IMG/VR virus record: IMGVR_UViG_3300027816_000051
Location: 1 to 64,000 of that record
Direction: 5' to 3' (one strand)
DNA length: 64,000 nt
In this document: positions 4,068-18,920 of the stretch, in pieces
How the letters are laid out: every line of letters starts with the position of its first letter
How positions within the stretch are numbered: position 1 is the stretch's first letter
Position numbers and translations under genes: made by a program
Notes under the pieces: model-generated
The model's database searches: none
Told to the model about the DNA's origin: nothing
What the model saw: only the letters and a program-made list of their open reading frames with translations

Positions 4068-4068
4068 A

Positions 4069-4201: not shown

Positions 4202-4206
4202 ATGTT

Positions 4207-4283: not shown

Positions 4284-4286
4284 ATT

Positions 4287-4364
4287 TGGGGTAAATAATC
4301 GGATTCGAACCGACGACCTTCTGGACCACAATCAGACGTTCTAACCAACTGAACTATATCTACC
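4287..4364 (-). tRNA. tRNA-His(GTG)
   Basis: Loop TTGTGGT; encoded G-1 opposite C73; CCA encoded. Confidence 0.93.
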
Positions 4365-4372
4365 ATTTATAA

Positions 4373-4423
4373 ATTATAAGGTTCAAACCTTATAATGAAC
4401 CATTATAAGTCTCACACCTTATA
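4373..4423. repeat. Chain of overlapping short inverted repeats around TTATAA
   Basis: ATTATAAGGTTCAAACCTTATAATGAACCATTATAAGTCTCACACCTTATA. Confidence 0.6.
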
Positions 4424-4426
4424 TTG

Positions 4427-4500
4427 AGGTCCCGAGTGGATTCGAACCACCGAATAAGAGTTTTGCAGACTCCCCCCTTAAGCCACTTGGGTACAGGACC
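4427..4500 (-). tRNA. tRNA-Cys(GCA)
   Basis: GGAGT CTGCAAA ACTCT; U73. Confidence 0.93.
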
Positions 4501-4501
4501 G

Positions 4502-4576
4502 TGGTGATTCCTAAAGGACTCGAACCCTTACTTCAACGTCCGTAGCGTTGCGTGCTATCCATTACACCAAAGAACC
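4502..4576 (-). tRNA. tRNA-Arg(ACG)
   Basis: CAACG CTACGGA CGTTG; CCA encoded. Confidence 0.93.
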
Positions 4577-4577
4577 A

Positions 4578-5006
4578 TTACTTAATTCGTTCATCCCATT
4601 CTTCTTGGGTCCCCAATCTAATTGGAACGAACAATGCAAATCCATCATCATCTTCAAAATGGTTACAATCATCCTCTCTCCAACCAAACTTATATCTCAT
4701 GTGTATAAATTTGTTTGTCTCTTGATTCCATCTTGCGATTGTGGTATTTCTATGTTCACCAATATAAATTTGACCATTTACTAAATCTTTTTTAGGAATC
4801 GCACCTGCGTCAATTAGTTTCGGAACATAGAACTCTCTCCATTCTTTTTCATCCACTCTTGGAAGAGTTGGGACATCTTCGGGATTATTAATCTTTGGTA
4901 AATTCTCCCAATGATTCCTAATCATTCTTTCCCTCTCTTCTTTTAGTTTCATTTTCTCCGCTTCAAATTTCATTTTGACGGCGTTGATGTTATCATTTCT
5001 TTCCAT
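4578..5006 (-). CDS. Hypothetical protein
   Basis: Start moved to MERNDNI (5006); upstream part of the track ORF is tRNA-Trp/Val sequence. Confidence 0.8.
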   Translation of the reverse strand: MERNDNINAVKMKFEAEKMKLKEERERMIRNHWENLPKINNPEDVPTLPRVDEKEWREFYVPKLIDAGAIPKKDLVNGQIYIGEHRNTTIARWNQETNKFIHMRYKFGWREDDCNHFEDDDGFALFVPIRLGTQEEWDERIK

Positions 5007-5028
5007 GTCGTTTATTTTTAAAAGTTTG

Positions 5029-5099
5029 CACAGGTGGAGAGATTCGAACTCCCAACAACGGTTTTGGAGACCGGTATGATACCCTTTCACTACACCTGT
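5029..5099 (-). tRNA. tRNA-Trp(CCA)
   Basis: CGGT CTCCAAA ACCG anticodon arm. Confidence 0.93.
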
Positions 5100-5107
5100 G
5101 TATTGTG

Positions 5108-5180
5108 TAGTCCCTGTCGGATTCGAACCGACGACCCTCTGCATGTAAGGCAGACGCTCTCCCAACTGAGCTAAGGAACT
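5108..5180 (-). tRNA. tRNA-Val(TAC)
   Basis: TCTGC CTTACAT GCAGA. Confidence 0.95.
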
Positions 5181-5190
5181 ATGAAAGGAA

Positions 5191-5313
5191 AGAGGAAGAT
5201 GGTTCAGTGGACATCCTCTTTTACGATTGGCGTTACTTCAGGTGAATATCTGCAAACTCCGAATACATCATCCAATATTCACTCTCGAGATATTGATGTA
5301 TCATTCCCCAATC
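5191..5313 (-). ncRNA. Candidate pseudoknot/switch RNA
   Basis: GATTGG/CCAATC closing stem; crossing TACATCA/TGATGTA and GTGAATAT/ATATTCAC stems; trailing GAGGA/TCCTC hairpin. Confidence 0.5.
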
Positions 5314-5321
5314 AACCTTTG

Positions 5322-5395
5322 TGTCCCCGATGCGACTCGAACGCATAACCCCCACATTAAAAGTGTGGTGCTCTAACCAATTGAGCTACGAAGAC
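5322..5395 (-). tRNA. tRNA-Lys(TTT)
   Basis: CCACA CTTTTAA TGTGG. Confidence 0.95.
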
Positions 5396-5400
5396 AAATG

Positions 5401-5473
5401 TGGTACCGACAGGAATTGAACCTGTGACACCCAGATTTTCAGTCTGGTGCTCTACCAACTGAGCTACGGTACC
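5401..5473 (-). tRNA. tRNA-Phe(GAA)
   Basis: CCAGA CTGAAAA TCTGG. Confidence 0.95.
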
Positions 5474-5843: not shown

Positions 5844-5851
5844 TATTTATA
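5844..5851 (+). promoter_or_regulatory. Putative phage late-promoter motif TATTTATA
   Basis: Same octamer precedes many structural genes on either strand. Confidence 0.6.
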
Positions 5852-5887: not shown

Positions 5888-6142
5888 ATGAACTTCAAAA
5901 AATGGATTATTGACCTTTTCAAAGATGAAAGAGGGTCAACTTCAATCAAACCGGTAATCGCCCTTTTAGGTGCATTATTCCTTTGCGGAACCATGATGGC
6001 AAATTCTTTTACACATGGTGACATTAAACCATCAGAAGAATTGGTAAACGCGGTGATGGTCATTACCGCTATTGGAATGGGTGCAGATACTTTAGATAAG
6101 TTCTCACATAAAAAGAAATCAGACGACGAAGTTTCTGAGTAA
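5888..6142 (+). CDS. Small 2-TM membrane protein (holin-like)
   Basis: Two hydrophobic segments and a charged C-terminus. Confidence 0.6.
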   Translation: MNFKKWIIDLFKDERGSTSIKPVIALLGALFLCGTMMANSFTHGDIKPSEELVNAVMVITAIGMGADTLDKFSHKKKSDDEVSE

Positions 6143-6147
6143 AAATT

Positions 6148-6172
6148 ATGGGGTTAGATAACCCCATTTTTT
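6148..6172 (+). terminator. Intrinsic terminator
   Basis: ATGGGGTT-AGAT-AACCCCAT plus T run. Confidence 0.7.
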
Positions 6173-6179
6173 CTTTTTT

Positions 6180-6677
6180 GTGATGAAGAGACTGCCCATC
6201 ATATTATTATTATTTCTAATATCATTTGGATTTTCGAATCTGAATGCCCAAACTATTGTTGTTGATACGGTAATCAATAACATTAAAATTGGTCCGTTCA
6301 CCGAAAATAAGAATTTGGCTTTCGGTGTTAAAAATATAATTGAAGAAATCATCAATGAACAGGATAGTTTAATTCTGATTACAGATAAAAATAAAGCAGA
6401 CTACAAAATTAAAGTTGAACTCATATTTTTTGACATTGTAACGACTAACTCGGGGGTTAGTATTTTTCACGAAGACAAAACAACCACCGTCATAAGAATG
6501 AAAGGTGTATTGTACAAAGGTGATAAAAAAATTAAACAGGAATTTTCGGAAGGTAAATCAACCGAAATTTCAACCTCAACCATAATGATTGATGAGGGTG
6601 GTAAATTCAATCAACAATCTGCTAGTTCGGCATTAAAGAAAACAACTCAAAACCTAATAAACAAACTAATACTATGA
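6180..6677 (+). CDS. Exported protein, probable CsgG/TolB-N-like fold
   Basis: Sec signal peptide; C-terminal G.S.....KFNQQSASSALKK parallels the CsgG-like protein at 9477. Confidence 0.6.
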   Translation: MMKRLPIILLLFLISFGFSNLNAQTIVVDTVINNIKIGPFTENKNLAFGVKNIIEEIINEQDSLILITDKNKADYKIKVELIFFDIVTTNSGVSIFHEDKTTTVIRMKGVLYKGDKKIKQEFSEGKSTEISTSTIMIDEGGKFNQQSASSALKKTTQNLINKLIL

Positions 6678-8590
6678 AAAAATTATTATTTATCCTAACC
6701 GCGTTAATTTTTACGACGACCGCGTTTTCTCAAACTACGCCACAGATTGGTAATCCTGTTGCGTATAAAACAATCAAAAGGGGTGACACCCTTGATGTTG
6801 TGTTTAAATACACACCAGCATCTTCTGTTGATGTTAGAACTTTCCAAGTTGATTTTCAATATAGAAAACAACTTTTCACTCACGTATCAACAACTGTCGA
6901 CCCAACTGTGAGTACTATGACACCAGCACTTTCGATTAAGTTCTTTAACAACTACAAATACTCAAGCTACAGTTCGGGAACTGGTTTGTACTCATATTCA
7001 ACGGATACAAATTACACTGTGGCAAGAAACTTTTTGGTTTTGTCAAGTGGTTCTCAAATCACCCAAGACACCTTTTTGATTCACAACAAATTTATCATCA
7101 ACGATGTTGAATCGAACTTCGACGCGGACAGTGTTGAAATAAACTGGGCTCGAATGTTCAAATATGACGGTACTACAATAGGTGATAACATTGCAATCTT
7201 AGATGTTCAAGACATGCATCTTGAACTTTTGGGTAACTTGGTTATCAGTGGTGTTGTTGAATTACCGCCAACAATGAAACTAAATGGTAGAAGACCAACA
7301 GTTATATGTACAAAATACAACACAGGTACATTTGTATCATCAGCACTTTGTGACACTGCGGGTTTCTACTCACTTAACAACGTAGATAAAAATACTAAGT
7401 ATAAATTACTTGTAAGATTCCCCGCGGATAGTATGGAAGTTTTCAGAGATTACGCAGTGACAATATCAGACGCGGTAAAAACATATGATGAATATACAGT
7501 AACTGATGTAAACCAAGGATTTGGTCAACAATATTTGAAAAATGGCTTGGCTTATCTAATAGGTGATATGAACCAAAACGGAAAGTTAGATGGTGGTGAC
7601 CCATACTTGATTTATGCAAACGTTAGTGGTATGAAAAAAATTGACACCACAACCATGATTAGAACATTCCACGCTGATGTTTATGATTCATTAGTGTTAG
7701 GTTCAACACAATGGAATGATTGGCCAAATCATTTAACCGCCACCAATTTTATTACTGATAGTGTTGGATTAACTAATAAGACAGTAAACATTAAGTACTT
7801 TATTCAAGGTGATGTTGACAGAACTTACTCATCGAGAGTATGGAACTCATCAGGTGTATTAGTAGCTAAGGCGGTGTTTAAAGGTAAATTAGATGTTGAG
7901 ATACCTAATACCGCATCATCAGGTAATCAACCAATATACGTACCATTTAATGTAAACACTAATGGTGATAATAATTATGGTCTACAGTTTGAAATGAAAT
8001 ATGATAAAAACAAGGTTAAATTTGAAGAAATCATATCTAATTTTAACGGAGGTCCATGGTTACAGTACGTTACACATGACGCAACTGCTGGTACAATTAG
8101 ATTTGGTGGTATGAATAACCAATTTAAAGATGGTTTAATTGGTCAAGCAACACCATTTAAATTAAAATTTTCACCTATTGGAAATAATGATATTGTGAGT
8201 AATATTTACGTTAGACAATTAATGGACGCATCCGATGAAAGAGGTGACCACTTGAATATTGACTTAGTTAGTAGTGTTGCTGTTATTATGTACAAAATGG
8301 CACCACCTATGAATCAAGACATTGATGAAATTACAGCATCAATTCGTCCAAACCCAACTGGTGGTTGGTTTGAATTAGAAGTAAAATTTCCCAACCCAAA
8401 CATGTCAATGAATGTTTCCATCTATGATAATAGAGGTCAACTAATTAAACAAGTTGGTTCTGTTACCACTAACTATATGGAAACAACTGCCTACAAACAA
8501 ATTGATATGAGTTCTGCATCATCAGGTAATTATTATCTGATTTTGAATAATTATAATAAACAATTAACAAGACAATTTATAAAAGTTTAA
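6674..8590 (+). CDS. T9SS type-A-sorted protein with cohesin-like and dockerin-like modules
   Basis: Signal peptide; GDMNQNGKLDGGDPYLI Ca-loop and later QGDVD; GLQFEMKYDKNKVKFEEI...IRFGG cohesin-like; C-terminal IRPNPT...IYDNRGQLI...GNYYLIL...QFIKV sorting domain. Confidence 0.8.
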   Translation: MKKLLFILTALIFTTTAFSQTTPQIGNPVAYKTIKRGDTLDVVFKYTPASSVDVRTFQVDFQYRKQLFTHVSTTVDPTVSTMTPALSIKFFNNYKYSSYSSGTGLYSYSTDTNYTVARNFLVLSSGSQITQDTFLIHNKFIINDVESNFDADSVEINWARMFKYDGTTIGDNIAILDVQDMHLELLGNLVISGVVELPPTMKLNGRRPTVICTKYNTGTFVSSALCDTAGFYSLNNVDKNTKYKLLVRFPADSMEVFRDYAVTISDAVKTYDEYTVTDVNQGFGQQYLKNGLAYLIGDMNQNGKLDGGDPYLIYANVSGMKKIDTTTMIRTFHADVYDSLVLGSTQWNDWPNHLTATNFITDSVGLTNKTVNIKYFIQGDVDRTYSSRVWNSSGVLVAKAVFKGKLDVEIPNTASSGNQPIYVPFNVNTNGDNNYGLQFEMKYDKNKVKFEEIISNFNGGPWLQYVTHDATAGTIRFGGMNNQFKDGLIGQATPFKLKFSPIGNNDIVSNIYVRQLMDASDERGDHLNIDLVSSVAVIMYKMAPPMNQDIDEITASIRPNPTGGWFELEVKFPNPNMSMNVSIYDNRGQLIKQVGSVTTNYMETTAYKQIDMSSASSGNYYLILNNYNKQLTRQFIKV

Positions 8591-8594
8591 AACT

Positions 8595-8933
8595 ATGAGC
8601 GACGAAACAAACGTACCAGAATCTGACGGAACATGGTCAGGCCTTAAGAAAACATTAATCGGAACTATTTCAACCGCAATTTTAGCTGGTGGTACATGGT
8701 TTACTACTACTCTTATGGGTGGTGGTGAAGAAAAAAATGAACCCACACCAACTCAACAATCGGCACCTGTTATTAATTTAAATGTAGATAATTCTTCTAA
8801 GAACACATCATCAAGTGGTGGGGGAAATACTACAATTATAAAAGAAAGAGTGGTTGAAAAACCATCCAAATCAGAACCTTCTAAACCTAAAAAAGAAGGT
8901 GATGAATTTAAAGAAAAAGAACCACAATGGTAA
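8595..8933 (+). CDS. Membrane-anchored low-complexity protein
   Basis: One N-terminal hydrophobic segment; Ser/Pro/Lys/Glu-rich tail. Confidence 0.75.
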   Translation: MSDETNVPESDGTWSGLKKTLIGTISTAILAGGTWFTTTLMGGGEEKNEPTPTQQSAPVINLNVDNSSKNTSSSGGGNTTIIKERVVEKPSKSEPSKPKKEGDEFKEKEPQW

Positions 8934-9475
8934 ATAATCAACCAACCGGATTTAAAGACCTTCTTAATTCAATGATGAAAAGAAGGTGGTTTATTACCGC
9001 GATTGTTTTAGGTGGATTTATGTTTATTATGGCTGGAATATTTGCCGCCATAATTGGTAAAAATGAAATAGGTGGAGAATGGAAAGAACTTCTTCTTTTA
9101 CTTCTTGGTGCTTTCATTGGTTCTTATGGTAAAATCATTGACTATTGGTTCAGTGATACCGATAAAGATAAAATGTTAGTACAAAAAATGGATGAGGAAG
9201 ATGGTACATCTTTGTCAAACACCGCCGATATGAAAACACCAATCAATCAAAGTTTAGATGAATCTACCCCTCAAGTCACTCCTCAAGTCACCCCCCAAGT
9301 TGGTGTGGAAATAGACGAAGATGGTGATGGTGTAATGGATGGTTTAGATTTTGATAATGATGGTATCATAGATGAATATTTTGAACATCGTCAATGTGAG
9401 CACGTTTGGGGCGACCAAGATAATGACGGTGATTTAGAATGTTTGAAATGTGGTAAGATTAAAGACCCTGAGTAA
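8927..9475 (+). CDS. 2-TM membrane protein with DxDxDG Ca-binding-like repeats and Cys/His motif
   Basis: Two TM segments; DEDGDG, DFDNDG, DQDNDG; CEH...CLKC. Confidence 0.75.
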   Translation: MVNNQPTGFKDLLNSMMKRRWFITAIVLGGFMFIMAGIFAAIIGKNEIGGEWKELLLLLLGAFIGSYGKIIDYWFSDTDKDKMLVQKMDEEDGTSLSNTADMKTPINQSLDESTPQVTPQVTPQVGVEIDEDGDGVMDGLDFDNDGIIDEYFEHRQCEHVWGDQDNDGDLECLKCGKIKDPE

Positions 9476-9476
9476 T

Positions 9477-10235
9477 ATGAAAAATTTCTTATTTAAGAAA
9501 ATTTTATCTCCAATTGTTTTAGTAATACTATGGTTTTTGGCGATGTTACTATTTGCTAATACGGTAAGTGCTCAAGTTGTGGGTAAGACACAAACAGAAC
9601 AATATAAAGCGTCTTTTGAAACAAATGTGTCTATAGATTCTCTTATGGATTATGATGGCCCTCAAATCCCAATACAAATTTTGAAAATTGGTATTAGTGA
9701 TGAGGTGTATGAACAATATCCCGAACTAAAAGAAAAAAAAGTTGGTTTGGGTGTTGCCAATATTACACTTGAATATTTGGAGAATTTAAATAGATTCACA
9801 TTTACCGAAGACAAAACTGAAATCAAAAATCGTATGGTGAAACAATACCAAGCATCTCAAGCCGGTATTAGTTATGACACATTAAATGGTAGAGGTAAGA
9901 TAAGATTGGCACATTATTTTGTGACAATTGAAGTTTATGAATTTTCAGTGAGTGAGGATGAAACCGTAAATCTTAGTAATGGTGTTAAAAATACCGTTGT
10001 AACTAGATTAGGTTTACAGGTTAGATTTACAGACGCAGAAACCGGTCAAATAATCGCCGCAAGTGGTTTAGGTGAAGCGGTAACAGTAAGAGAACTCAGT
10101 CTTTTGAATGATGATAATTTAAGTGAAGTGAAGTTTAATCAATCAACAATAGGTATTAGTACAAAAAAAGCATTAGATATTGCTTGTTCAAGAATTCTAT
10201 TAAGAATGATAAAAAAGGGTGTATTCCCAAAATAA
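9477..10235 (+). CDS. CsgG-family (curli assembly/transport-like) protein
   Basis: Signal peptide; GLGVANITLEYLENLNRFTFTE, VTIEVYEF, LGLQVRFTDAETGQIIAASG pattern typical of the CsgG/TolB-N family; start set at MKNFLFK. Confidence 0.7.
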   Translation: MKNFLFKKILSPIVLVILWFLAMLLFANTVSAQVVGKTQTEQYKASFETNVSIDSLMDYDGPQIPIQILKIGISDEVYEQYPELKEKKVGLGVANITLEYLENLNRFTFTEDKTEIKNRMVKQYQASQAGISYDTLNGRGKIRLAHYFVTIEVYEFSVSEDETVNLSNGVKNTVVTRLGLQVRFTDAETGQIIAASGLGEAVTVRELSLLNDDNLSEVKFNQSTIGISTKKALDIACSRILLRMIKKGVFPK

Positions 10236-10256
10236 CTTCATAATGTTTAAAAGTTA

Positions 10257-10284
10257 ATAAAAGGGGGGTTAAACCCCCTTTTTA
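10257..10284. terminator. Probable bidirectional terminator hairpin
   Basis: A-run, G-run/C-run hairpin, T-run. Confidence 0.6.
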
Positions 10285-10286
10285 AT

Positions 10287-12083
10287 ATGGTTATGAATTT
10301 TAAAACGTTAATATTAAGTTTTTTTCTTATTTTCGTATGTAACATATCGAAAGCACAGGTATCAACATATACCTTTATCGACCCTTGTACAAAAGAGGTA
10401 ACTATGTTTAGTGTACCAATACAGGGTGGTAAAACAATGATTATTTTTTTAGATAATGTTGGTTACTTTGATGCTAATGATTTGTCAAATGGTAATTTTT
10501 CAAATTGGGTAAATCAGGTTTACACAAAATACAGACAGACCAATCCCTGTTCACAACAACAAGGTCAGGTAATTCAAAATCAGATAACCGCACAAATAAT
10601 TGGAGGTACGATTCAGTCAGTTGTTAGTTCTATTTTGTCAAGCAGTCAATCACAATCAACAAGTTTAGAAAGTGGTTCGTCAAGTAGTGATGCTGGTGGA
10701 AAAGACAATAAAAATTCTGAAAAAAAGAAAAATAATAATTCATCCCAAACAAATGGAAATAATTCATCTCAATCAAATACAACGAGTACTACTTCAACTC
10801 AAACTGGAGGACAATCCCAAACGAATTCAGGAACTAATAACTCAAATGGAGGAAGTGGTTCAACATCAGGAAATGGGAATACAACGAATGGTGGAGGGAC
10901 ATCAGGTTCAGGTAACACAACTCAAGGTGGAAATTCAACGACTCAACCGTCTGTAGGAACAAACACGTCTACTAACAACAATTCAGGTTCAACCAATAGT
11001 GGTGGTTCTGGTGGTACTAACAATAGTTCGTCTAATAATACGAACACAACAACCGGTAACAATGGAACATCTACAAATACTTCGGGTGGTTCAACAACTA
11101 ATACAAACGGTTCGGCAACCACAAGTGGTAGTGGTGGTAGTAATACCAACAATTCAAATAGTGGAGGTTCTAATACAAACGGTTCTAATGGTAATACCAC
11201 AGGTGGTTCTACAAATGGTAATAGTGGGGGTTCTAATGGTGGTACCACTAGTGGTACAAATACAACAGGTGGAAGCGGTTCAAGTAATACTAATAACACC
11301 AACACAAATAATCAAAAGGGTGAGGAAGTTGGTGCCACAACACAAATGAATAATGATGCACACAATGATAATAATGCGGGTGGAGGTTCTAATAGTGGTG
11401 GTAAAGGTAAATCAGGGGGTAGTGGTAGTGCGAGGTCAAACCCTATAATAGTTTCTTCTGATATTACCTCAGCACAAAACTTGAATAGAACATTTACACC
11501 TATTGTTAATATAGGTACAAGTAAATCGTCAATGACGGGTTTATCAAGTTATGGTGTTACTGGTATGGTATGGTTAAACTTTAAACAGTTTGCTGTTTCG
11601 GCTAAATACACTAAAATACATTACAGTAAATCAAAAAAATTAAAATTCATACATAATTTAAATTTAACGGGTGTATATACTTACGGAAACTACTTGGGTT
11701 TTGTTGGTTATAGTGGGATTTTAAATGGTGGAAAATACGGTGTAACAGGTTTTAATATAAGTGGTGCAGCCACGATAATATCAGAAGAAAAAAGTGGTTA
11801 TTATTCACCATCAATTACCGCTTTTTATACAAGACCAATTAAGGTTAGTAAAAAAATGATAGTTAGTCCTGAATTATATGTTATTTCTACACCATTGGTT
11901 TATTCAACCAAAGACAAAGTATCAATAAGTGATAGATACGTGAGTGGGTTTATTGGGACGGGTATTGATTATCAAATATCAAAAAGATTTAAGTTAAATG
12001 TCAACTATAAAGCAAATATGAGTACAAATCCGGAATTTCCGATTTTGTCATTCTTTTTAATTGGTAGTAAGATAAATTTATGA
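10287..12083 (+). CDS. Exported protein with long S/T/N/G-rich linker and probable C-terminal beta-barrel
   Basis: Signal peptide; about 260 aa of low complexity; C-terminal alternating amphipathic strands ending GSKINL. Confidence 0.7.
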   Translation: MVMNFKTLILSFFLIFVCNISKAQVSTYTFIDPCTKEVTMFSVPIQGGKTMIIFLDNVGYFDANDLSNGNFSNWVNQVYTKYRQTNPCSQQQGQVIQNQITAQIIGGTIQSVVSSILSSSQSQSTSLESGSSSSDAGGKDNKNSEKKKNNNSSQTNGNNSSQSNTTSTTSTQTGGQSQTNSGTNNSNGGSGSTSGNGNTTNGGGTSGSGNTTQGGNSTTQPSVGTNTSTNNNSGSTNSGGSGGTNNSSSNNTNTTTGNNGTSTNTSGGSTTNTNGSATTSGSGGSNTNNSNSGGSNTNGSNGNTTGGSTNGNSGGSNGGTTSGTNTTGGSGSSNTNNTNTNNQKGEEVGATTQMNNDAHNDNNAGGGSNSGGKGKSGGSGSARSNPIIVSSDITSAQNLNRTFTPIVNIGTSKSSMTGLSSYGVTGMVWLNFKQFAVSAKYTKIHYSKSKKLKFIHNLNLTGVYTYGNYLGFVGYSGILNGGKYGVTGFNISGAATIISEEKSGYYSPSITAFYTRPIKVSKKMIVSPELYVISTPLVYSTKDKVSISDRYVSGFIGTGIDYQISKRFKLNVNYKANMSTNPEFPILSFFLIGSKINL

Positions 12084-14365
12084 GAAATGTACTATTTTTT
12101 ATATTGTTTTTGTTGTTACCTGTCTTAGCTTTTTCACAAGCAACAACAATGTCATTGGGTACAAGTAGTACGGGTGTGGTATCATCTACTTACAATACAT
12201 GGACCAAGGTTGACCCTAATTTAACAATTACAGCAAATGGGACAATAAATGGATTTAGAGTTCAAATATCTCAAACGTACACAAGTGGCGACCAATTGAG
12301 GTCAACATCAACTTTACCAACAGGTGTGAGTGCTTCTTTTAATACTACCACAGGTATATTAGTATTTTCGGGCACAGCAAGTGCAAGTGATTGGCAAACA
12401 GTATTGAGAGGTGTTGAATTTAAATCAACAACATCAACTTGTTACCCACTACAAAGGAGAGTCACATTTGTTGCTGGTTTAGTTTTTTACAACCCATTAA
12501 CTGAACATTTTTATGAATATGTTTCATCATCAGGTTCATGGACAACCGCAAAAACTAATTCTGAGTTAAGGTCTTATTTTGGTAGAGCCGGTTATTTAGC
12601 GACCATGTCTTCTGAAGCTGAAAATAATTTTATTTGGAAATTAATGTCATCAGATGGTTGGTTTGGGGCGTCGGATGAGATGAGTCAGGTTAATACCGCT
12701 AAGGGTTCTACCGTTTATACTTCACAAGCGGCGGTAGAACAAAAATGGCATTGGGTGTCAGGTCCTGAGAAGGGGACACAGTTTTCTAACGGTAGTACCG
12801 CGGTAACGGGTCAATACTCAAAATGGGCTGGTGGTGAACCAAATAATGCGGGTGGTGAACATTATGCACAATTTTATTCCGCGAACAGTGGACAATGGAA
12901 TGATTTACCTAACACTAACTTACCCGGTTATATTTGTGAATATGGAGACATGCCAAACGACCAAACATCAAGTATCACAATATTAACAAGGAATGTTGAA
13001 ATCAGTAACGCTTCAAGTGGTTACATAAGTGGTGGTAACATAAATGTTTGTTCGGGTAGTAACAGCACAACTTTAACGTTAAATGGGTATACAGGTAGTA
13101 TTGTTAGATGGGAATCTTCTTTTGATAACTTTTTTACCGCAGCAACCACAATATCGAGTACATCTTCAAGTATAACAGTAACCAACTTAACTAAAACCAC
13201 ATACTACAGAGCGGTAATAAATTCAACAAGTCCTGTGAGTTGTACAGGTTTAGTAACATCAAGTGTTTATCTGTCTGTAAAACCAACAAAATCAGGTTCA
13301 GTATTTGCGGTAAATAATAGTATATGTGCGGGAGGGCAATCCGAATTAACATTATCTGGTCAACAAGGTAATGTAAATAAATGGCAACGCTCAACTAATG
13401 GAACAACATGGACCGATATATCAAATACAACCACAAGTCTTACCGAAACAATTAGTAGCGCCGGAACTTATTATTATAGGGTAGAAGTTCAAACTCCAAA
13501 TTGTGGTAGTGCGGTCTTTTCTGATTCTAAAATAATCACAGTTACATCGGGAACACCTCCTGTTGGTGGTTCTATATCTTCATCAACACATACTTCTACA
13601 ACAAACTCAGGAACACTTACACTAAGTAGTTACACGGGTACAATTGTTAAATGGCAACGTTCAACAAATGATGGTGTAACATGGACTGACATTGTAAACA
13701 CATCGACAACTTATTCATACACAAATATAACCGTCAAAACATTGTTCAGAGCTCAATTACAAAGTGGTACTTGTGGTTTCGCTTATAGTTCATCAGGTTC
13801 TGTAACGATTATAACTGAAACAATAATCGGTACAATTACGATACCTACAGGTTTATCGGTAAGACCACAAGTAAAATTATATTTGGTTGAAAATGGTGTT
13901 GAGACACTGTTACAAACTGTCACGGTTGGTACAACAGGTACTTACACTTTAAACCCAACAAAATATAACTCAACTTATAAAATAGTTCCTTCGTTTTCAT
14001 CATCATTAACGTCCGCAGATTTTGATAATGTTTTTAATGAGTCACAAAACGAAAATACACCGAGTTTATTACAACCCGGTGTAGTATTGAATAATGGCCC
14101 GAAAATGAAAGCTGGCGATATTAATAAAGATGGTAAGGTAACAATATCGGATGCGTACTTATTAGGTGCTAATTTAACAAGTATGATAACATTTGATGAG
14201 GTTTATTGGTACACCGCGAATGATTTTAATTCGTTAACAATATCAAACTTCAATACAGTCACTCCATCAAATAATTTCTCAATAAATTTTACAAATACAT
14301 CAGTTACTTTTAACATCAAGTATATTGTAAAAGGAGATGCTAACTTATCTTCTTCGTCTTATTGA
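12080..14365 (+). CDS. C-type lectin / Ig-like repeat / dockerin-like adhesin
   Basis: Signal peptide; GYLAT..SEAENNFI..W.G.SD..W.W..G..Y.KWAGGEPNN..E....WND..YICEY C-type lectin; three ICxG..LTLxG..G....WQ repeats; GDINKDGKVTISDAYLL...KGDAN dockerin-like end. Confidence 0.85.
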   Translation: MRNVLFFILFLLLPVLAFSQATTMSLGTSSTGVVSSTYNTWTKVDPNLTITANGTINGFRVQISQTYTSGDQLRSTSTLPTGVSASFNTTTGILVFSGTASASDWQTVLRGVEFKSTTSTCYPLQRRVTFVAGLVFYNPLTEHFYEYVSSSGSWTTAKTNSELRSYFGRAGYLATMSSEAENNFIWKLMSSDGWFGASDEMSQVNTAKGSTVYTSQAAVEQKWHWVSGPEKGTQFSNGSTAVTGQYSKWAGGEPNNAGGEHYAQFYSANSGQWNDLPNTNLPGYICEYGDMPNDQTSSITILTRNVEISNASSGYISGGNINVCSGSNSTTLTLNGYTGSIVRWESSFDNFFTAATTISSTSSSITVTNLTKTTYYRAVINSTSPVSCTGLVTSSVYLSVKPTKSGSVFAVNNSICAGGQSELTLSGQQGNVNKWQRSTNGTTWTDISNTTTSLTETISSAGTYYYRVEVQTPNCGSAVFSDSKIITVTSGTPPVGGSISSSTHTSTTNSGTLTLSSYTGTIVKWQRSTNDGVTWTDIVNTSTTYSYTNITVKTLFRAQLQSGTCGFAYSSSGSVTIITETIIGTITIPTGLSVRPQVKLYLVENGVETLLQTVTVGTTGTYTLNPTKYNSTYKIVPSFSSSLTSADFDNVFNESQNENTPSLLQPGVVLNNGPKMKAGDINKDGKVTISDAYLLGANLTSMITFDEVYWYTANDFNSLTISNFNTVTPSNNFSINFTNTSVTFNIKYIVKGDANLSSSSY

Positions 14366-14703
14366 ATTTGAATTATTTTATTGTAAGTGTCGGTAATCTC
14401 ACCACATGTTTCATAATCTTCATTGGTTTCAAAGAAAGGTAAGATATCTCTAACTAATACTATTGATTCTTGTCTCTTAAATTTTAATTCGGTCTCCCAC
14501 TGTAAACCATTTATCTTAGCGCCCAAGACTAAAGTTACATTGTTTTTATCTTTTCTTTTGAGACTTTTAAATAGATTCGCTAAGGTGCGATAAATAAGTT
14601 CTTTATTGACGTTGTAAAAATCACCAAAACTTTTATAGTCTTGTTTTAGTATTAACTTCTTGATTACGGTGTCATTTGGTTTTTTAGGTAGTTTTGTTGA
14701 CAT
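14359..14703 (-). CDS. Hypothetical protein
   Basis: Clean ORF with an upstream near-consensus host promoter (TTTG-N20-CATATTTG). Confidence 0.7.
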   Translation of the reverse strand: MSTKLPKKPNDTVIKKLILKQDYKSFGDFYNVNKELIYRTLANLFKSLKRKDKNNVTLVLGAKINGLQWETELKFKRQESIVLVRDILPFFETNEDYETCGEITDTYNKIIQIQ

Positions 14704-14786: not shown

Positions 14787-15197
14787 TTATACAGTATGTT
14801 CAATCTGAACCCGTACACAATTTTGTGGTAATCTATGGATGTGTCTGTAATTGTTGATGTAACCCATCATATTGGCACTACCAATCGCGTTAGCTGAATG
14901 TATAACAACATCAACAACTGGTTTACCATCCAACCATTGTTCCACTAACCACTTGGTACAATCCATACCTGTTTTTTCTTTGATGTTGTTGTAGTCTAAT
15001 TCGTAATTATGATAAACATTACGATGCCATTCAGCCATTGCGGTATCACCTAAATCATGGTCAAGAGAAATTAAACTAATATTCTCCAATCCAATTTCTG
15101 ATACTTTCTCAACAAACTCCTCATATGTTCGAACAATGACCCATTCGTCCTTTAGTACTGGTGTTCTAACGTCATCTAAATAAATTCTTTTTTTCAT
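14787..15197 (-). CDS. Cyclic-phosphate-processing receiver-domain protein
   Basis: IYLDDVRTP, ISLDHDLG, TGMDCTKWL and IHSANAIG motifs; adjacent to RNA ligase and kinase. Confidence 0.8.
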   Translation of the reverse strand: MKKRIYLDDVRTPVLKDEWVIVRTYEEFVEKVSEIGLENISLISLDHDLGDTAMAEWHRNVYHNYELDYNNIKEKTGMDCTKWLVEQWLDGKPVVDVVIHSANAIGSANMMGYINNYRHIHRLPQNCVRVQIEHTV

Positions 15198-15213
15198 TGT
15201 ATGATTTTTCTTA

Positions 15214-16299
15214 CTAATTCTCTTCATCTTTTTTAAATGGTTTTGAATATGGTGGATATAATATTTTCCATATTATATTTTTATATGATTTACCATCCAA
15301 CATATTAAACAGTATTGAAGGGTGGGAATATCTTTTAGCTAATTCAGCAAACTCCGCTCGGGTAAATTCTTTTTGGTATGATTCAAAATAAACGTTACGA
15401 ATTTTGTTGAATATCCATTTATATTCCTTTTCGATATTTTCAAATCGAATCACAAAGTCCTTTACCGTTTCTTTCACCCAACTATTAAATTCATCTGGTA
15501 CCTTCTCAAGTAACTCATCAAATGGTTTATCTTCTTTAAGATATTCCCAAATATCTCTACTTGACACATTAGTTAGTATTCTATGTAAACGAACATACTC
15601 TTCGAATTTTATTTTCATTCTAAAGTTCGATGGGTAGAAACGAATAACAAACCCTTCACTATTTGGGGTGTTTAGTTTTTTATAGTTGTCAAATGTTTCC
15701 TTGTTGAAGGTTACCATAGTGCTATCGACAATATCTTTCTCTTCAATATCCGATGAATGAAAAATTGCTCGAGCGGTGTGCCAGTTTAATTCTCCTATGG
15801 GTGTTGTTACAGATAAAAAGGTAATCTTATCACAACCATAGTTCACTACTATCCTATTTTCGGGATAAATAATTTCACATAAATAGGTAACTTCCTTCAT
15901 GAATTTACTTAAATCATATTTTGATTTAAGAATTTCTAAACCACGAATGGATTGTTCCGAGGTAAAAGAACCTCTTGTTGACATAATCCATTCACCATCA
16001 TAAAAGAAAAGGATTCCAAGAGAACCATCCATTTTATCTTGGATGTGAGTATACTCACTATCCCAAGGAATTAAATTTTTATCAATAACCTCTTCGTAGT
16101 TGAAAAATTTACCAAATGGTTTTGATATTACTTCTCCTGAATGGGTTGTAATAAGACCACGACATTGCATAGTAATATCATCCCACAAAGATTCATATTG
16201 TACTCTTGGTGTGTAATTCCATATGTACAAATCTTTGGTTGGGTGAGTTTGTTTCATTAACAAACCATCCTTATGATATCTCTCTAAAACTTCAATCAC
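15214..16299 (-). CDS. rnlA: T4 Rnl1-like RNA ligase
   Basis: QCRGLI, KPFGKFFNYEE, motif I DKMDGSLG, TYLCEII, EGFVIRF, MKIKFEEY. Confidence 0.92.
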   Translation of the reverse strand: MIEVLERYHKDGLLMKQTHPTKDLYIWNYTPRVQYESLWDDITMQCRGLITTHSGEVISKPFGKFFNYEEVIDKNLIPWDSEYTHIQDKMDGSLGILFFYDGEWIMSTRGSFTSEQSIRGLEILKSKYDLSKFMKEVTYLCEIIYPENRIVVNYGCDKITFLSVTTPIGELNWHTARAIFHSSDIEEKDIVDSTMVTFNKETFDNYKKLNTPNSEGFVIRFYPSNFRMKIKFEEYVRLHRILTNVSSRDIWEYLKEDKPFDELLEKVPDEFNSWVKETVKDFVIRFENIEKEYKWIFNKIRNVYFESYQKEFTRAEFAELAKRYSHPSILFNMLDGKSYKNIIWKILYPPYSKPFKKDEEN

Positions 16300-16709
16300 A
16301 ACTTAATTTCAAAACGATTTTTCATAATCTCTAATTTGTCTTCAGGAACTCCATGTATGTTCTCACCACCGTGTCTGTTTTCAACCACAATAGTGTGAAC
16401 TCTGTAACCATATCTTTTAGCCATTTCAAAATATGGCTCCATTTCCCATTCTTGTGTAAAAGTGTTTGAAACAACAACCCTAACAACACTATTCATCATT
16501 AAATTGGCACATCTTTGTTGACAATCATTATGTGCTTCCCTTAATTTTGTTGGGTCGAAATTATAATTACCCTCTTTATCTGTAAAGTAATCGTCCGCAG
16601 ACAATGGTTTCAACGGGTTATTTGGAGTGTATAAAATTATCTCCCCTAAAGTAGATTTACCCGAACCAGGTAACCCTCTCACTAAAATCAAATCTTTTGT
16701 ATATTCCAT
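16296..16709 (-). CDS. Stand-alone polynucleotide kinase (P-loop, AAA_33-like)
   Basis: LVRGLPGSGKST Walker A; SADDYF; VSNTFTQEWE; HGVP; no HAD phosphatase domain. Confidence 0.85.
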   Translation of the reverse strand: MEYTKDLILVRGLPGSGKSTLGEIILYTPNNPLKPLSADDYFTDKEGNYNFDPTKLREAHNDCQQRCANLMMNSVVRVVVSNTFTQEWEMEPYFEMAKRYGYRVHTIVVENRHGGENIHGVPEDKLEIMKNRFEIKL

Positions 16710-16901: not shown

Positions 16902-18920
16902 TTACCCCTTTTTTTTAAAAATTTTTATTTCTCCGTCTTTAATTTTCAAATTAATTGTTTCGTTTTCTTTGATTTCACCTCTTAAAATTGAATCACTTAA
17001 ATAATCTTCACACATATTTTGGATAATTCTTTTAATAGGTCTCGCACCAAAATCTTCTTGTGTATTCAATTCAGATATCCTTTCTACAATTGTTTTATCA
17101 AAAGAAACTTTAAAATTCTTTTCTTTAAGTCGGATTACTAATTTATTCAATTCAATCTCAATAATCTTTTTAATCACATCTTTATCTAAAGAATTAAAAC
17201 TGATTATATCATCTACTCGATTTAAAAACTCAGGATTAAAATGTTGTTTGAGTGATTTTTGAACAATTGACTTTTTGACTTCATAGTTTTGAGACGTTGA
17301 TGACGACGAACTAAACCCAACACCCTTACCGAATTCGGATACTTTTTTAGCACCGATGTTAGATGTCATAATCACAATAGTGTTGGTAAAATTCACTTTT
17401 CTTCCAAAAGAATCTGTCAAGTGCCCCTCATCCAATATTTGAAGTAGAATGTTGAACACATCTTTATGTGCTTTTTCAACCTCATCAAATAGAACTACTG
17501 AGAATGGATTATTTTTGATTTTTTCAGTGAGTTGTCCACCTTCATCATAACCAACATATCCTGGAGGTGACCCGATTAATTTAGCAACATTGTGTTTTTC
17601 CATGTACTCACTCATGTCAACACGAATTACTTTTTCAGCATCCCCAAAAAGTAGTTCGGCGATACTTTTAGCGAGATACGTTTTACCAACACCTGTTGAA
17701 CCTAAGAAAATAAAAGAACCGATTGGTTTATTGGTATCTTTGATACCAACTCTATTTCTTCTAATGGCTTTAGAGATGATTGATATTGCCTCGTCCTGTC
17801 CAATCACTTTAGATTTTAATTTTTCTTCTAAATTTAATAGATTTGTTGTTTCTCTGTCATCAATTTTAGAAAGAGGTACTCCAGTTATTTGTGATATTAT
17901 CTCGTAAACATCAGCAATTGTTACTGGTGTTTTATTGTCTTTTTGTTTATCTAACCATTTCTTTTTCTCTTCATCTAACTTACTTAATAACTTTCTTTCT
18001 TCATCACGTAACTTAGCTGCCTGTTCGTAGTTTTGACTTTTAACGACTTGTATTTTTTTATCCTTCAAATCATCAGATTCCTTTTTAAGTTTTTCAATAA
18101 TTTCGGGAATCTTTGTGTTGATTTTTTTATCAGAACCTAATTCGTCCATTACGTCAATCGCCTTATCGGGGAACTGACGGTCCGTGATAAATCTAGATGA
18201 GAGACTAACAATAGTTTCAAAAACTTCCGGTTCGTAAAAAACTTTATGGAAGTTTTGATAAGAATCTCTTAGGTTATTTAGAATTTGTACGGTTTCTTCT
18301 TTAGTTGGTTCTTTAAGGATTATCTTTTGGAATCTACGAACCAACGCACCATCTTTTTCGATATGTTTTTTAAATTCGTCAAATGTTGTTGCACCAATAC
18401 ATTGAATTTCACCCCTTGCTAAAGCGGGTTTCATAATATTAGCAGCATCCATTGAACCACTAGCATTACCCGCTCCAACCATAGTGTGAATCTCATCTAT
18501 GAATACAATTACGTTTGGTTCGTTCTGTAATTCATTTAGAATAGCTTTAATCCTTTCTTCAAACTGTCCTCTATATTTCGTGCCAGCAACTAAGGATGTT
18601 AAATCTAACGAGACTATTCTCTTATCTAAAAGATTTGATGGACAATCTCCCTTGACAATCATTTGTGCTAATTTTTCAACCAACGCTGATTTACCAACAC
18701 CCGCATCACCAACTATTACTACGTTGTTTTTCTTTTTTCGAGATAATATCTGTGCAATTCTCTTGACCTCACTATCTCGACCTATAACGGGGTCTACTTT
18801 ACCCTCTTCAACCATTTTATTCAAATCTCTTGAAAAGTTATCAAGGATAGGGGTGGTTGAACCCTTCCTTGTTTTCTTTGGGTTGGTTGTGTTTCCTTCT
18901 TCGAAAAAATCTACTGACAT
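16902..18920 (-). CDS. clpC: ClpC/ClpA-type Hsp100 AAA+ ATPase lacking the N-terminal Clp-repeat domain
   Basis: LDNFSRDL, DPVIGRD, GDAGVGKS, RGQFEER, UVR-like QNYEQAAKLRDEE, GSTGVGKT, GSPPGYVGY, FGARPI. Confidence 0.9.
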   Translation of the reverse strand: MSVDFFEEGNTTNPKKTRKGSTTPILDNFSRDLNKMVEEGKVDPVIGRDSEVKRIAQILSRKKKNNVVIVGDAGVGKSALVEKLAQMIVKGDCPSNLLDKRIVSLDLTSLVAGTKYRGQFEERIKAILNELQNEPNVIVFIDEIHTMVGAGNASGSMDAANIMKPALARGEIQCIGATTFDEFKKHIEKDGALVRRFQKIILKEPTKEETVQILNNLRDSYQNFHKVFYEPEVFETIVSLSSRFITDRQFPDKAIDVMDELGSDKKINTKIPEIIEKLKKESDDLKDKKIQVVKSQNYEQAAKLRDEERKLLSKLDEEKKKWLDKQKDNKTPVTIADVYEIISQITGVPLSKIDDRETTNLLNLEEKLKSKVIGQDEAISIISKAIRRNRVGIKDTNKPIGSFIFLGSTGVGKTYLAKSIAELLFGDAEKVIRVDMSEYMEKHNVAKLIGSPPGYVGYDEGGQLTEKIKNNPFSVVLFDEVEKAHKDVFNILLQILDEGHLTDSFGRKVNFTNTIVIMTSNIGAKKVSEFGKGVGFSSSSSTSQNYEVKKSIVQKSLKQHFNPEFLNRVDDIISFNSLDKDVIKKIIEIELNKLVIRLKEKNFKVSFDKTIVERISELNTQEDFGARPIKRIIQNMCEDYLSDSILRGEIKENETINLKIKDGEIKIFKKKG

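What the first reader, a model, noticed from the sequence alone, without database searches (positions are those of the whole stretch)
12080..14365. C-type lectin adhesin with a dockerin-like tail but no T9SS signal
Seen: intact EPN...WND lectin motif (EPN is the mannose/glucose-type signature), three Ig-like repeats, and a terminal module (GDINKDGKVTISDAYLL...KGDAN) paralleling that of the 638-aa protein (GDMNQNGKLDGGDPYLI...QGDVD). Inference: docks on the scaffold cohesin and leaves the cell piggy-back or through the CsgG-like pore.
Basis: partly seen in the sequence, partly recalled or inferred. Interest (0 to 1): 0.6.

Follow-up and report, generated by a model that had tools for sequence, protein, structure and literature searches.

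The report
Phage-encoded lectin with docking module
The gene is real and does encode an exported calcium-type sugar-binding protein with a dockerin-like anchor, but it belongs to a giant freshwater phage of Flavobacterium-like bacteria, inside a conserved phage gene cassette that seems built to place sugar-binding proteins in or on the envelope of the infected cell.

Summary
ORF 12080-14365 (+) is intact and encodes 761 aa.
- EPN253-255, E260 and WND273-275 are invariant in 140 orthologues.
- There are three 32-35% identical Ig-like repeats.
- A C-terminal module is paralogous to residues 219-387 of the 638-aa neighbour (E=6e-11).
- No T9SS sorting domain is found.

The window is the start of a 288-kb T4-like jumbo phage with terminase, portal, capsid and 23 tRNAs. 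The gene closes a seven-gene envelope cassette that is syntenic in 55 viral contigs. A compact version sits in the cultured Flavobacterium phage immuto.

The "tail" is not a free dockerin. It is a transthyretin-like sandwich with an inserted helical subdomain that keeps one intact dockerin-type calcium loop. The 638-aa protein has a true cohesin fold and a type A T9SS domain.

Each complete cassette has exactly one lectin copy and one scaffold copy of the module, and both switched module type together. In related proteins, those checked being viral, the same module carries C-type, legume-type or LamG lectin heads.

This favours an anchoring role. Docking on the cohesin, and the route across the outer membrane, remain untested.

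The parts
12080..14365 (+). Whole ORF of the 761-aa lectin (P0001), including the stop codon
   Evidence: 100% identical copies lie in four other IMG/VR contigs, and 55 related viral loci were found.
12080..12136 (+). Sec signal peptide, residues 1-19. Predicted cleavage exposes Gln20 (Bacteroidetes Q-rule).
   Evidence: Hydrophobic segment at residues 1-26. The sequence ...AFS|QATT is conserved as Q-A-T-S/T in the orthologues. Q-rule: PMC5837995.
12140..12499 (+). N-terminal domain of unassigned fold, residues 21-140, highly conserved. It ends at invariant Cys121.
   Evidence: No Pfam hit. 79% mean conservation across 140 orthologues.
12500..12949 (+). C-type lectin-like domain, residues 141-290. 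EPN is at 12836-12844, Glu260 at 12857-12859 and WND at 12896-12904.
12986..13843 (+). Three Ig-like repeats (residues 303-401, 402-491, 492-588) of the kind found next to T9SS type B domains (Ig_7)
   Evidence: The cysteines are invariant.
13844..14362 (+). C-terminal anchor module, residues 589-761. A transthyretin/CarboxypepD_reg-like sandwich is interrupted by a three-helix dockerin-like insert. The intact calcium loop D680-x-N682-x-D684-G...D691 lies at 14117-14152.
   Evidence: AF2 pLDDT 87.5, pTM 0.83. VIA Z 7.3 to the transthyretin-related protein 2igl, with the alignment spanning model residues 1-168. Profile against PDB: most hits, and the four best, are dockerins, the best 4uyp_B at E=0.0032. 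D63, D96 and D107 of the module are invariant.
6674..8590 (+). 638-aa scaffold protein (P0002). It has a signal peptide and a possible N-terminal cohesin-like domain. The same anchor module lies at residues 190-392 (7241-7849), the cohesin-fold domain at residues 395-548 (7856-8317), and the T9SS type A sorting domain at residues 559-638 (8348-8587).
6180..6677 (+). 165-aa exported protein, first gene of the cassette here. In some lineages it lies after the lectin gene.
   Evidence: The immuto homologue is 23% identical, E=3e-7. No fold was assigned.
8595..8933 (+). 112-aa cassette protein with a weakly hydrophobic N-terminal stretch (putative membrane anchor; below the hydropathy cut-off used)
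   Evidence: 41% identical to the immuto homologue.
8927..9475 (+). 182-aa membrane protein with an acidic, Cys-bearing C-terminus. It is not present in phage immuto.
9450..10235 (+). 261-aa exported protein, probably CsgG/HfaB-like. It is the best-conserved cassette member. The true start is probably the ATG at 9477.
   Evidence: Atlas features 0.94. hhalign against Bacteroidota CsgG: 75% probability, E=2.5e-5. 57% identical to the immuto homologue. Not found in 401 sampled Bacteroidota genomes.
10287..12083 (+). 598-aa protein with a signal peptide, a small Cys34/Cys88 domain, about 260 aa of N/G/S/T-rich low complexity, and a C-terminal outer-membrane beta-barrel. Its stop overlaps the lectin start.

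Best explanation
The 761-aa protein is an exported, calcium-dependent lectin encoded by a T4-like jumbo phage of Flavobacterium-type Bacteroidota.

Shown by sequence and models:
- A Sec signal peptide obeys the Bacteroidetes Q-rule.
- A conserved N-terminal domain is followed by a C-type lectin domain with a complete EPN/E/WND calcium-sugar site.
- Three Ig-like spacers follow, two of them with an invariant cysteine pair.
- The C-terminal anchor module is a transthyretin-like sandwich carrying one intact dockerin-type calcium loop and helix.

Inferred:
- After Sec export and folding in the periplasm, the module tethers the lectin to a partner made by the same cassette. The most likely partner is the 638-aa scaffold, which the host T9SS secretes and which carries a cohesin fold and the same module. 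The beta-barrel protein, or the scaffold's own module, are alternatives.
- The infected cell's envelope thereby gains a new mannose/GlcNAc-type glycan-binding activity.
- The lectin head is the exchangeable business end and the module is the constant adaptor.

Open points: the biological purpose could be sticking infected cells to particles or neighbouring hosts, or masking receptor glycans against superinfection or progeny loss. How the lectin crosses the outer membrane is also not established.
For: Phage origin:
- The record is a 288,260-bp virus, 92% complete.
- The window holds terminase, portal, T4-type capsid protein and DNA polymerase and 23 tRNAs.

Export:
- Five of the seven cassette proteins have signal peptides ending in Q (PMC5837995).
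- The cysteines are invariant.

Lectin.

Cassette:
- The same gene order is found in 55 viral loci and in the cultured phage immuto.
- No counterpart of the 261-aa protein was found in 401 sampled Bacteroidota genomes.
- The genome-contig scan found no full-length lectin homologue.

Anchor role of the module:
- Every complete locus has exactly one scaffold copy and one lectin copy.
- In an ML tree the scaffold and lectin modules of one lineage group together (100/99 for both types). Meanwhile lectin residues 1-577 stay 62-78% identical across lineages.
- The same module ends proteins whose heads are Lectin_C, legume lectin or Laminin_G_3. It recurs in viral clusters annotated Por_Secre_tail/Cohesin/Dockerin_1.

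Cohesin fold of the scaffold.

Dockerin likeness.
Against: - No direct evidence of binding. The complex prediction gave no answer, so it counts neither way.
- The lectin has no known outer-membrane export signal, so it may stay periplasmic.
- Only half of a dockerin is present, and it is embedded in another domain.
- The cohesin assignment rests on a model whose overall confidence is low (pLDDT 55.7), although the domain itself scores 70-87.
- One relative of the module (P0130) sits behind a tail-fibre-type Mtd_N domain without a signal peptide. This hints that the module can also work on virions or bind a host-surface component directly.
- EPN predicts sugar preference but does not prove it.
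- Evidence of expression is limited to four small contigs in RNA libraries that may contain DNA.
Confidence: 0.55

Rival explanations
1. One reading: the C-terminal module docks on a cohesin domain of the 638-aa scaffold, and the pair is carried out together by the T9SS (piggy-back), displaying the lectin on the cell surface.
For: - The scaffold has a cohesin fold and a T9SS type A domain.
- The module profile finds mostly dockerins in PDB.
- The two modules are paired 1:1 and switch type together.
- T9SS moves folded cargo (my own knowledge).
Against: - The scaffold carries the same module itself, so the shared partner could be something else, or the modules could pair with each other.
- Only one of the two dockerin repeats is intact.
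- No case of T9SS hitch-hiking is known to me or was found in the literature searches.
- The docking prediction gave no answer.
Confidence: 0.3
2. The lectin stays in the periplasm, or is only released at lysis. It acts there on peptidoglycan, glycoproteins or glycan precursors, or on debris and neighbouring cells after lysis. The cassette is an envelope-remodelling or lysis-associated module rather than a display system.
For: - The lectin has a signal peptide but no outer-membrane export signal.
- A small holin-like membrane protein gene lies just upstream at 5888-6142.
- The cassette includes a membrane protein (182 aa) and a putatively membrane-anchored 112-aa protein.
Against: - The partner scaffold is a T9SS cargo destined for the surface.
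- The long Ig-like stalk and the interchangeable lectin heads are typical of surface adhesins.
- No lysis enzyme was identified in the cassette.
Confidence: 0.15
3. The protein is a virion component, either a tail-fibre tip or a capsid decoration, that binds host or environmental glycans.
For: - Lectin plus Ig-like architectures are common on virions (my own knowledge).
- One relative of the module follows an Mtd_N tail-fibre domain and lacks a signal peptide.
- The gene lies about 10 kb from the packaging and head genes.
Against: - A cleavable signal peptide is conserved in all orthologues, and virions assemble in the cytoplasm.
- The cysteine pairs are invariant.
- The gene is embedded among a T9SS cargo, a beta-barrel protein and a CsgG-like protein.
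- PHROGs gives no structural-protein hit.
- The module is not found in any tail gene of this 288-kb genome.
Confidence: 0.08

Closest known systems
Cellulosomal type I cohesin-dockerin pairs (e.g. PDB 4uyp, 6kge, 1ohz)
   Same: - The neighbour has a cohesin-fold domain.
- The module has a D-x-N-x-D-G...D calcium loop followed by a helix, and a preceding helix ending in a conserved Asp.
- The design is modular: a constant adaptor with variable heads.
   Different: - Only one calcium loop is intact.
- The helices are inserted into a transthyretin-like sandwich rather than forming a free 60-70-aa module.
- The scaffold carries both cohesin and adaptor.
- The heads are lectins, not enzymes.
- The host is a diderm Bacteroidota and the genes are viral.
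- Binding is untested.
Animal collectin-type C-type lectin domains (mannose-binding protein, collectin-11, SP-D)
   Same: The long-loop region aligns with EPN, Glu and WND in register, which predicts calcium-dependent binding of sugars with equatorial 3- and 4-OH groups.
   Different: - There is no collagen or neck region.
- The canonical four-cysteine pattern is missing. Only Cys121 and Cys286 flank the domain.
- The Pfam score is below the curated cut-off.
- Specificity is unmeasured.
Flavobacterium johnsoniae RemA and other T9SS-secreted surface lectin adhesins (my own knowledge)
   Same: Both are lectin-bearing, repeat-rich proteins of a flavobacterial cell envelope. The Ig_7-type repeats are of the kind found in T9SS adhesins.
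   Different: - RemA has its own T9SS C-terminal domain and a different lectin type.
- This protein has no such domain and is phage-encoded.
Phage-encoded envelope proteins that change the host surface (lambda Lom/Bor, T5 Llp; Q-rule proteins of Porphyromonas phages, PMC10367356)
   Same: In both cases phage genes with host-type export signals are predicted to modify the outer membrane of the infected or lysogenic cell.
   Different: Those are single small proteins. Here a 6-7 gene set with scaffold, barrel, CsgG-like protein and an exchangeable lectin is conserved in lytic-type T4-like phages.
Flavobacterium phage vB_FspM_immuto genes 13-19 (MW353176)
   Same: It holds the same cassette in compact form:
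- a C-type lectin with a type II module (332 aa)
- a cohesin-like domain plus module (363 aa)
- a cohesin plus T9SS domain (243 aa, 28% identical, E=6e-15)
- homologues of the 112-aa (41%), 261-aa (57%), 598-aa and 165-aa proteins
   Different: - The immuto lectin lacks the N-terminal domain and the Ig-like repeats.
- The scaffold is split into two genes.
- There is no 182-aa gene.
- All these genes are annotated only by domain or as hypothetical, and no paper found discusses them.

Membership tests
C-type lectin-like domain, calcium-dependent carbohydrate-recognition type (Pfam PF00059) | Sequence match to the family | tested here: met
   The family profile hits 53 PDB chains, all C-type lectin domains, the best at 7e-7. 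The Pfam score for this protein alone is below the cut-off (18.6 against 22.6 bits). Two other proteins carrying the same C-terminal module pass (28.0 and 28.9 bits).
C-type lectin-like domain, calcium-dependent carbohydrate-recognition type (Pfam PF00059) | Calcium site 2 ligands (EPN or QPD, Glu, WND) | tested here: met
   E253, P254, N255, E260, W273, N274 and D275 are invariant in 140 orthologues and aligned in register with mannose-binding protein.
C-type lectin-like domain, calcium-dependent carbohydrate-recognition type (Pfam PF00059) | Two conserved disulfides of the fold | tested here: not met
   Only Cys121 and Cys286 lie at the edges of the domain, so one disulfide at most is possible.
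C-type lectin-like domain, calcium-dependent carbohydrate-recognition type (Pfam PF00059) | Calcium-dependent sugar binding | not testable with these tools
   This needs a glycan array or ITC with and without EDTA.
Type I dockerin (Pfam PF00404) | Two tandem repeats of about 22 residues, each a calcium loop plus helix | tested here: not met
   Only the second loop (D680...D691) is intact. The first repeat keeps the helix and its Asp647 but has no D-x-N-x-D start.
Type I dockerin (Pfam PF00404) | Self-contained module of 60-70 residues | tested here: not met
   The helices at 61-75, 89-95 and 105-115 of the model are inserted between strands of one transthyretin-like sandwich.
Type I dockerin (Pfam PF00404) | Score above the curated threshold | tested here: not met
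   15.8 against 22.9 bits. In related viral clusters 28-36% of members carry a Dockerin_1 hit (53% in one bacterial cluster).
Type I dockerin (Pfam PF00404) | Binds a cohesin | not testable with these tools
   The single complex prediction returned no answer, which is not evidence either way.
T9SS cargo (type A TIGR04183/PF18962 or type B TIGR04131/PF13585 C-terminal domain) | Recognisable C-terminal sorting domain | tested here: not met
   The lectin gives no hit, even at E<=10. The same module is internal in the scaffold, so it is not itself the signal. The 638-aa scaffold meets the test.
Cohesin (Pfam PF00963), for the 638-aa neighbour | Cohesin jelly-roll fold | tested here: met
   Foldseek TM by target is 0.75-0.82 with rmsd 2.3-2.8 over about 146 columns to 6kge_A, 1g1k_A and 3ul4_A. 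The domain's pLDDT is 70-87. The Pfam score is below the cut-off (16.8 against 24.1 bits).
CsgG/HfaB outer-membrane secretion channel (Pfam PF03783), for the 261-aa neighbour | Family match and N-terminal lipobox cysteine | tested here: inconclusive
   There is no Pfam or PDB sequence hit. Atlas features score 0.94 to CsgG clusters. hhalign gives 75% probability, E=2.5e-5 over 108 columns. There is no lipobox cysteine after the signal peptide. Pore formation was not tested.
Virion receptor-binding or decoration protein | Cytoplasmic protein (no export signal), encoded with or matching structural genes | tested here: not met
   The signal peptide is conserved. PHROGs gives no structural hit. 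The neighbours are envelope proteins.

The most novel reading that the evidence does not exclude
T4-like flavobacterial phages carry a self-contained surface-display kit. It comprises a cohesin scaffold exported by the host's T9SS, their own CsgG-like and beta-barrel envelope parts, and plug-in lectins (C-type, legume-type, LamG) that share one calcium-dependent adaptor module. With it the phage reprograms what the infected cell sticks to, or hides its receptor glycans. The lectin, which has no export signal of its own, would reach the surface by riding on the T9SS cargo. That would be the first case of hitch-hiking through this secretion system.
Probability: 0.25. Interest if true: 0.85.

Novelty: new variant of a known kind. 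Interest (0 to 1): 0.62.

Why it matters
Phage genes that act on the host surface are usually single small proteins. Here a multi-protein envelope cassette is conserved across T4-like freshwater and brackish flavobacterial phages. Its CsgG-like member is more conserved than the capsid protein (57% against 41% identity to phage immuto). The phages themselves are common: the lectin gene is found intact in lake and freshwater metagenomes from ten or more studies.

If the cassette displays lectins on infected cells, it would be a way for phages to steer aggregation, particle attachment or superinfection of Bacteroidota, which are key degraders of algal carbon. It would also extend cohesin-dockerin-type assembly to viruses and to diderm bacteria that use the T9SS.

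A cultured phage-host pair (immuto and Flavobacterium sp. LMO8) carries the compact version, so the idea can be tested directly.

Tried and rejected
- Complex prediction of scaffold residues 395-548 and 22-188 with lectin residues 585-761 scored 0.03 against a mark of 0.34. The tool says this is no answer, so it is not used for or against binding.
- Full-length AF2 of the 638-aa protein was poor overall (pLDDT 55.7). Only the cohesin and sorting domains were usable. Whether the N-terminal domain is a second cohesin remains open.
- Foldseek of the C-terminal module against PDB gave nothing below E=0.078. Only the exhaustive aligner showed the split transthyretin-like sandwich.
- Profiles of the 261-aa and 165-aa proteins found nothing in PDB by sequence. 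hhalign gave no support for a CsgG-like fold in the 165-aa protein.
- The scan of 185,579 species genomes with lectin peptides found only partial matches: 27% identity to Ig repeats of a 3343-aa Saprospiraceae protein, plus a short 45% match (residues 508-569) in Aeromonas and a weak CTLD match in Luteolibacter.
- The profile of the 261-aa protein matched none of 401 sampled Bacteroidota genomes.
- Context look-ups for three relatives of the module gave only 1-4 kb contigs.
- Four metatranscriptome libraries gave eight small contigs on the cassette, five of them on the lectin gene (two at 100% identity). This is too little to claim expression.
- Literature searches found no description of a phage cohesin/dockerin/lectin cassette or of T9SS cargo in jumbo phages.
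- I considered whether the C-terminal module is a new T9SS signal. I rejected this because the same module is internal in the scaffold, which has its own type A domain.
- I considered whether the contig is bacterial and mislabelled as viral. I rejected this because phage hallmark genes surround the cassette and the synteny recurs in 55 viral contigs.

Full report
**The observation**

The ORF at 12080-14365 (+) is intact and encodes 761 residues. Its ATG overlaps the stop codon of the upstream 598-aa ORF.

- The lectin signature is genuine. A single-sequence search of PDB returns only C-type lectin domains and aligns EPN253-255, Glu260 and WND273-275 in register with mannose-binding protein, collectin-11 and CEL-I.
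- A profile of 23 orthologues raises this to 53 hits, all C-type lectin domains, the best at 7e-7.
- All seven residues of the calcium/sugar site are invariant in 140 distinct orthologues.
- Pfam's Lectin_C model scores below its threshold here but above it in two other proteins that carry the same C-terminal module.
- Three repeats of about 95 residues (303-401, 402-491, 492-588) are 32-35% identical to one another. The second hits Pfam Ig_7 at 2.6e-5.
- The last 150 residues align to residues 219-387 of the 638-aa neighbour at E=6e-11.
- Neither Pfam nor NCBIfam finds a T9SS sorting domain, even at E<=10.

The window is the first 64 kb of a 288,260-bp virus record judged 92% complete.

- It carries a T4-type large terminase, a portal, a gp23-like major head protein, a DNA polymerase and a helicase.
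- It has 23 tRNA genes in one array.
- A T4-style RNA repair cluster lies next to the finding.
- The capsid protein is 41% identical to that of the cultured Flavobacterium phage vB_FspM_immuto.
- The lectin has hundreds of close relatives (72-100% identity, about 763 aa). All are unnamed, on contigs of up to 311 kb.
- 55 related loci lie in IMG/VR.
- The gene is present intact in freshwater and lake metagenomes of at least ten studies.

**The cassette**

The lectin is the last of seven co-oriented, tightly packed genes at 6180-14365.

| Gene product | Features |
|---|---|
| 165 aa | Exported protein |
| 638 aa | Scaffold |
| 112 aa | Putative membrane-anchored protein (weak hydrophobic N-terminal stretch) |
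| 182 aa | Membrane protein |
| 261 aa | Exported protein |
| 598 aa | Signal peptide, small disulfide-type domain, about 260 residues of N/G/S/T-rich low complexity, C-terminal outer-membrane beta-barrel |
| 761 aa | The lectin |

- Five of the seven proteins have signal peptides whose predicted cleavage exposes glutamine. This is the Bacteroidetes Q-rule (PMC5837995). Phage proteins obeying the rule have been noted before in Porphyromonas phages (PMC10367356).
- The same gene order recurs in nearly all 55 viral loci.
- Phage immuto, which infects Flavobacterium sp. LMO8, has a compact version in genes 13-19. It contains a 332-aa C-type lectin ending in the module, and a 363-aa protein with the N-terminal scaffold half and the module. 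A 243-aa cohesin plus T9SS domain protein is 28% identical to scaffold residues 410-637 (E=6e-15). Homologues of the 112-aa (41%), 261-aa (57%, E=4e-89), 598-aa and 165-aa proteins follow.
- The host is therefore a T9SS-bearing member of the Bacteroidota, most likely a flavobacterium.
- The cassette looks phage-specific. A profile of the 261-aa protein matched none of 401 sampled Bacteroidota genomes. The species-genome scan found no full-length lectin homologue.

**What the tail is**

With an alignment of 34 modules, AlphaFold2 gives a confident model (pLDDT 87.5, pTM 0.83).

- Strands from both ends of the module (13-54 and 124-166) build a single transthyretin/carboxypeptidase-regulatory-type sandwich. 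The best match is Z 7.3 to 2igl, with the alignment spanning model residues 1-168.
- Three helices (61-75, 89-95, 105-115) are inserted between these strands.
- A profile of the module finds mostly dockerins in PDB: the four best hits and most of the 27 listed. The best is 4uyp_B at E=0.0032. It aligns a first helix ending in invariant Asp647, a linker, and the intact loop D680-x-N682-x-D684-G...D691 with its helix.
- The module is therefore half a dockerin embedded in another domain, not a terminal dockerin.
- The closing GDAN cannot form a second loop-helix. It is missing in the second module type of the lectin.

**The scaffold**

- The 638-aa protein passes the type A T9SS models.
- Its full-length model is poor, but residues 400-545 are modelled at pLDDT 70-87.
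- That domain superposes on solved cohesins with TM by target 0.75-0.82 and rmsd 2.3-2.8 over about 146 columns.
- Related viral clusters in the ESM Atlas carry Pfam Cohesin in 18-88% of members and Dockerin_1 in 28-36% of members. The module recurs there with TM 0.76-0.91 over all 177 residues in the strongest rows.

**Evidence that the module is an adaptor**

1. This genome has exactly two copies of the module, one in the lectin and one in the scaffold. Every complete related locus has exactly one of each.
2. There are two module types. Type I ends ...NIKYIVKGDxN. Type II has YYRMDVNGN... and ends ...YIIKTGYKQ. Both genes switch type in the same lineages.
   - In a maximum-likelihood tree, scaffold and lectin modules of type I group together, and so do those of type II (100/99 each).
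   - Cross-gene identity within a type (27-29%) exceeds same-gene identity across types (18-20%).
   - Shared insertions and deletions agree with this.
   - Meanwhile lectin residues 1-577 stay 62-78% identical across those lineages, while the scaffold drops to 21-23%.
   - The tree tool warned of long branches, so the grouping also rests on the identity matrix and the indels.
3. A profile search of 1.84 billion representative proteins finds 1191 matches. About fifty clusters have the complete module, usually at the very C-terminus.
   - Sampled members carry a C-type lectin, a C-type lectin plus Ig_7, a legume lectin, or a legume lectin plus Laminin_G_3. Each has a Q-rule signal peptide.

A constant module with interchangeable sugar-binding heads, and a 1:1 partner in the same operon, is what an anchoring adaptor looks like.

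**What is not shown**

- Binding of the module to the cohesin, or to anything else, is inferred.
- The scaffold carries the module too. The common partner could therefore be the cohesin, the other module, the N-terminal domain of the beta-barrel protein, or a host envelope component.
- One relative (P0130) joins the module to an Mtd_N tail-fibre domain and has no signal peptide. This keeps open the idea that the module can bind a host-surface structure directly.

**The route across the outer membrane is unknown**

- The 261-aa protein is probably a distant CsgG/HfaB-like protein (Atlas features 0.94; hhalign 75% probability, E=2.5e-5).
- It has no lipobox cysteine and no Pfam or PDB sequence match.
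- By my knowledge of curli secretion, CsgG channels pass unfolded chains. An 80-kDa protein with invariant cysteine pairs is therefore a poor candidate for that route.
- Riding on the folded T9SS cargo is physically more plausible but has no precedent that I know of or could find.

**Verdict**

The finding is real, and it is more interesting than a bacterial adhesin would be. It is a phage-encoded, exported, mannose-type C-type lectin. It is the exchangeable head of a conserved, apparently phage-specific envelope cassette built around a cohesin-fold T9SS cargo and a shared calcium-loop adaptor module.

I give it about 0.3. I give 0.55 to the broader statement that the module tethers the lectin to a cassette partner at the host envelope. 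The CsgG exit route is unlikely.

I found no description of this cassette in the literature available here.

- Read laying was given 5,901 letters.
- No alternative genetic code was used.
- The large representative search was used once, after Pfam and NCBIfam had left the C-terminal module open.

Noticed in passing
window 573-5473, minus strand: An array of 23 tRNA genes lies immediately upstream of the cassette. It covers 19 amino acids and includes three tRNA-Met and two each of Ile, Leu and Arg. The local GC rise to 0.43 at 2001-4000 fits this.
   Followed up: partly
window 14787-16709, minus strand: A T4-style RNA repair cluster lies next to the tRNA-rich region. It has a cyclic-phosphate-processing receiver domain protein (cREC_REC, 1.4e-22), a T4 Rnl1-type RNA ligase, and a small AAA_33 kinase-like protein. 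It probably counters host anticodon nucleases.
   Followed up: no
window 16902-18920, minus strand: A ClpB/ClpA-like double AAA+ ATPase of 672 aa is encoded by the phage (AAA_2 at 1.6e-70; phrog_4871 at 1e-244). It is conserved at 82-95% identity next to the cassette in related contigs.
   Followed up: no
window, 17 sites, e.g. 5844-5851, 23711-23718, 25539-25546, 34996-35003: The octamer TATAAATA occurs 17 times, against 10.3 expected. In 12 of the 17 cases it lies within 40 nt upstream of a start codon, but read as TATTTATA in the gene's direction. These include the terminase, portal and the small gene at 5888 (ORF starts). It may be a promoter or leader element of this phage group.
   Followed up: partly
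window 5888-6178: An 84-aa protein with a hydrophobic core (holin-like) lies here. It is followed by a GC-rich hairpin and a T-run at about 6150-6178 that looks like an intrinsic terminator, just before the first cassette gene.
   Followed up: no
window 10600-11400 (residues ~105-370 of the 598-aa protein): About 260 residues consist almost only of N, G, S and T, between a small two-cysteine domain and an outer-membrane barrel. The length varies between orthologues (493-598 aa in all). It could be a flexible stalk or a glycosylated or amyloid-prone segment.
   Followed up: no
protein P0130 (locus L061:272-1072): A 266-aa metagenomic protein joins an Mtd_N tail-fibre N-terminal domain (2.7e-11), with no signal peptide, to a complete type II copy of the module. 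The contig is only 1.1 kb, so its genome is unknown.
   Followed up: partly
loci L020 (8712-10568 and 10565 onward), L033 (9992-12703), L056: In a few related contigs the lectin gene is split (618 aa plus 119 aa in L020; 380 aa plus 293 aa in L056) or fused to the following 165-aa-type gene (903 aa in L033). These may be frameshifts or assembly errors. Locus L052 has a 994-aa version with extra sequence before the module.
   Followed up: no
window 12689-12898 and 14100-14400: Small contigs from four freshwater, lake and river metatranscriptome libraries match the lectin gene. Two match at 100% identity. The libraries may contain DNA, so this is only a hint of expression.
   Followed up: partly
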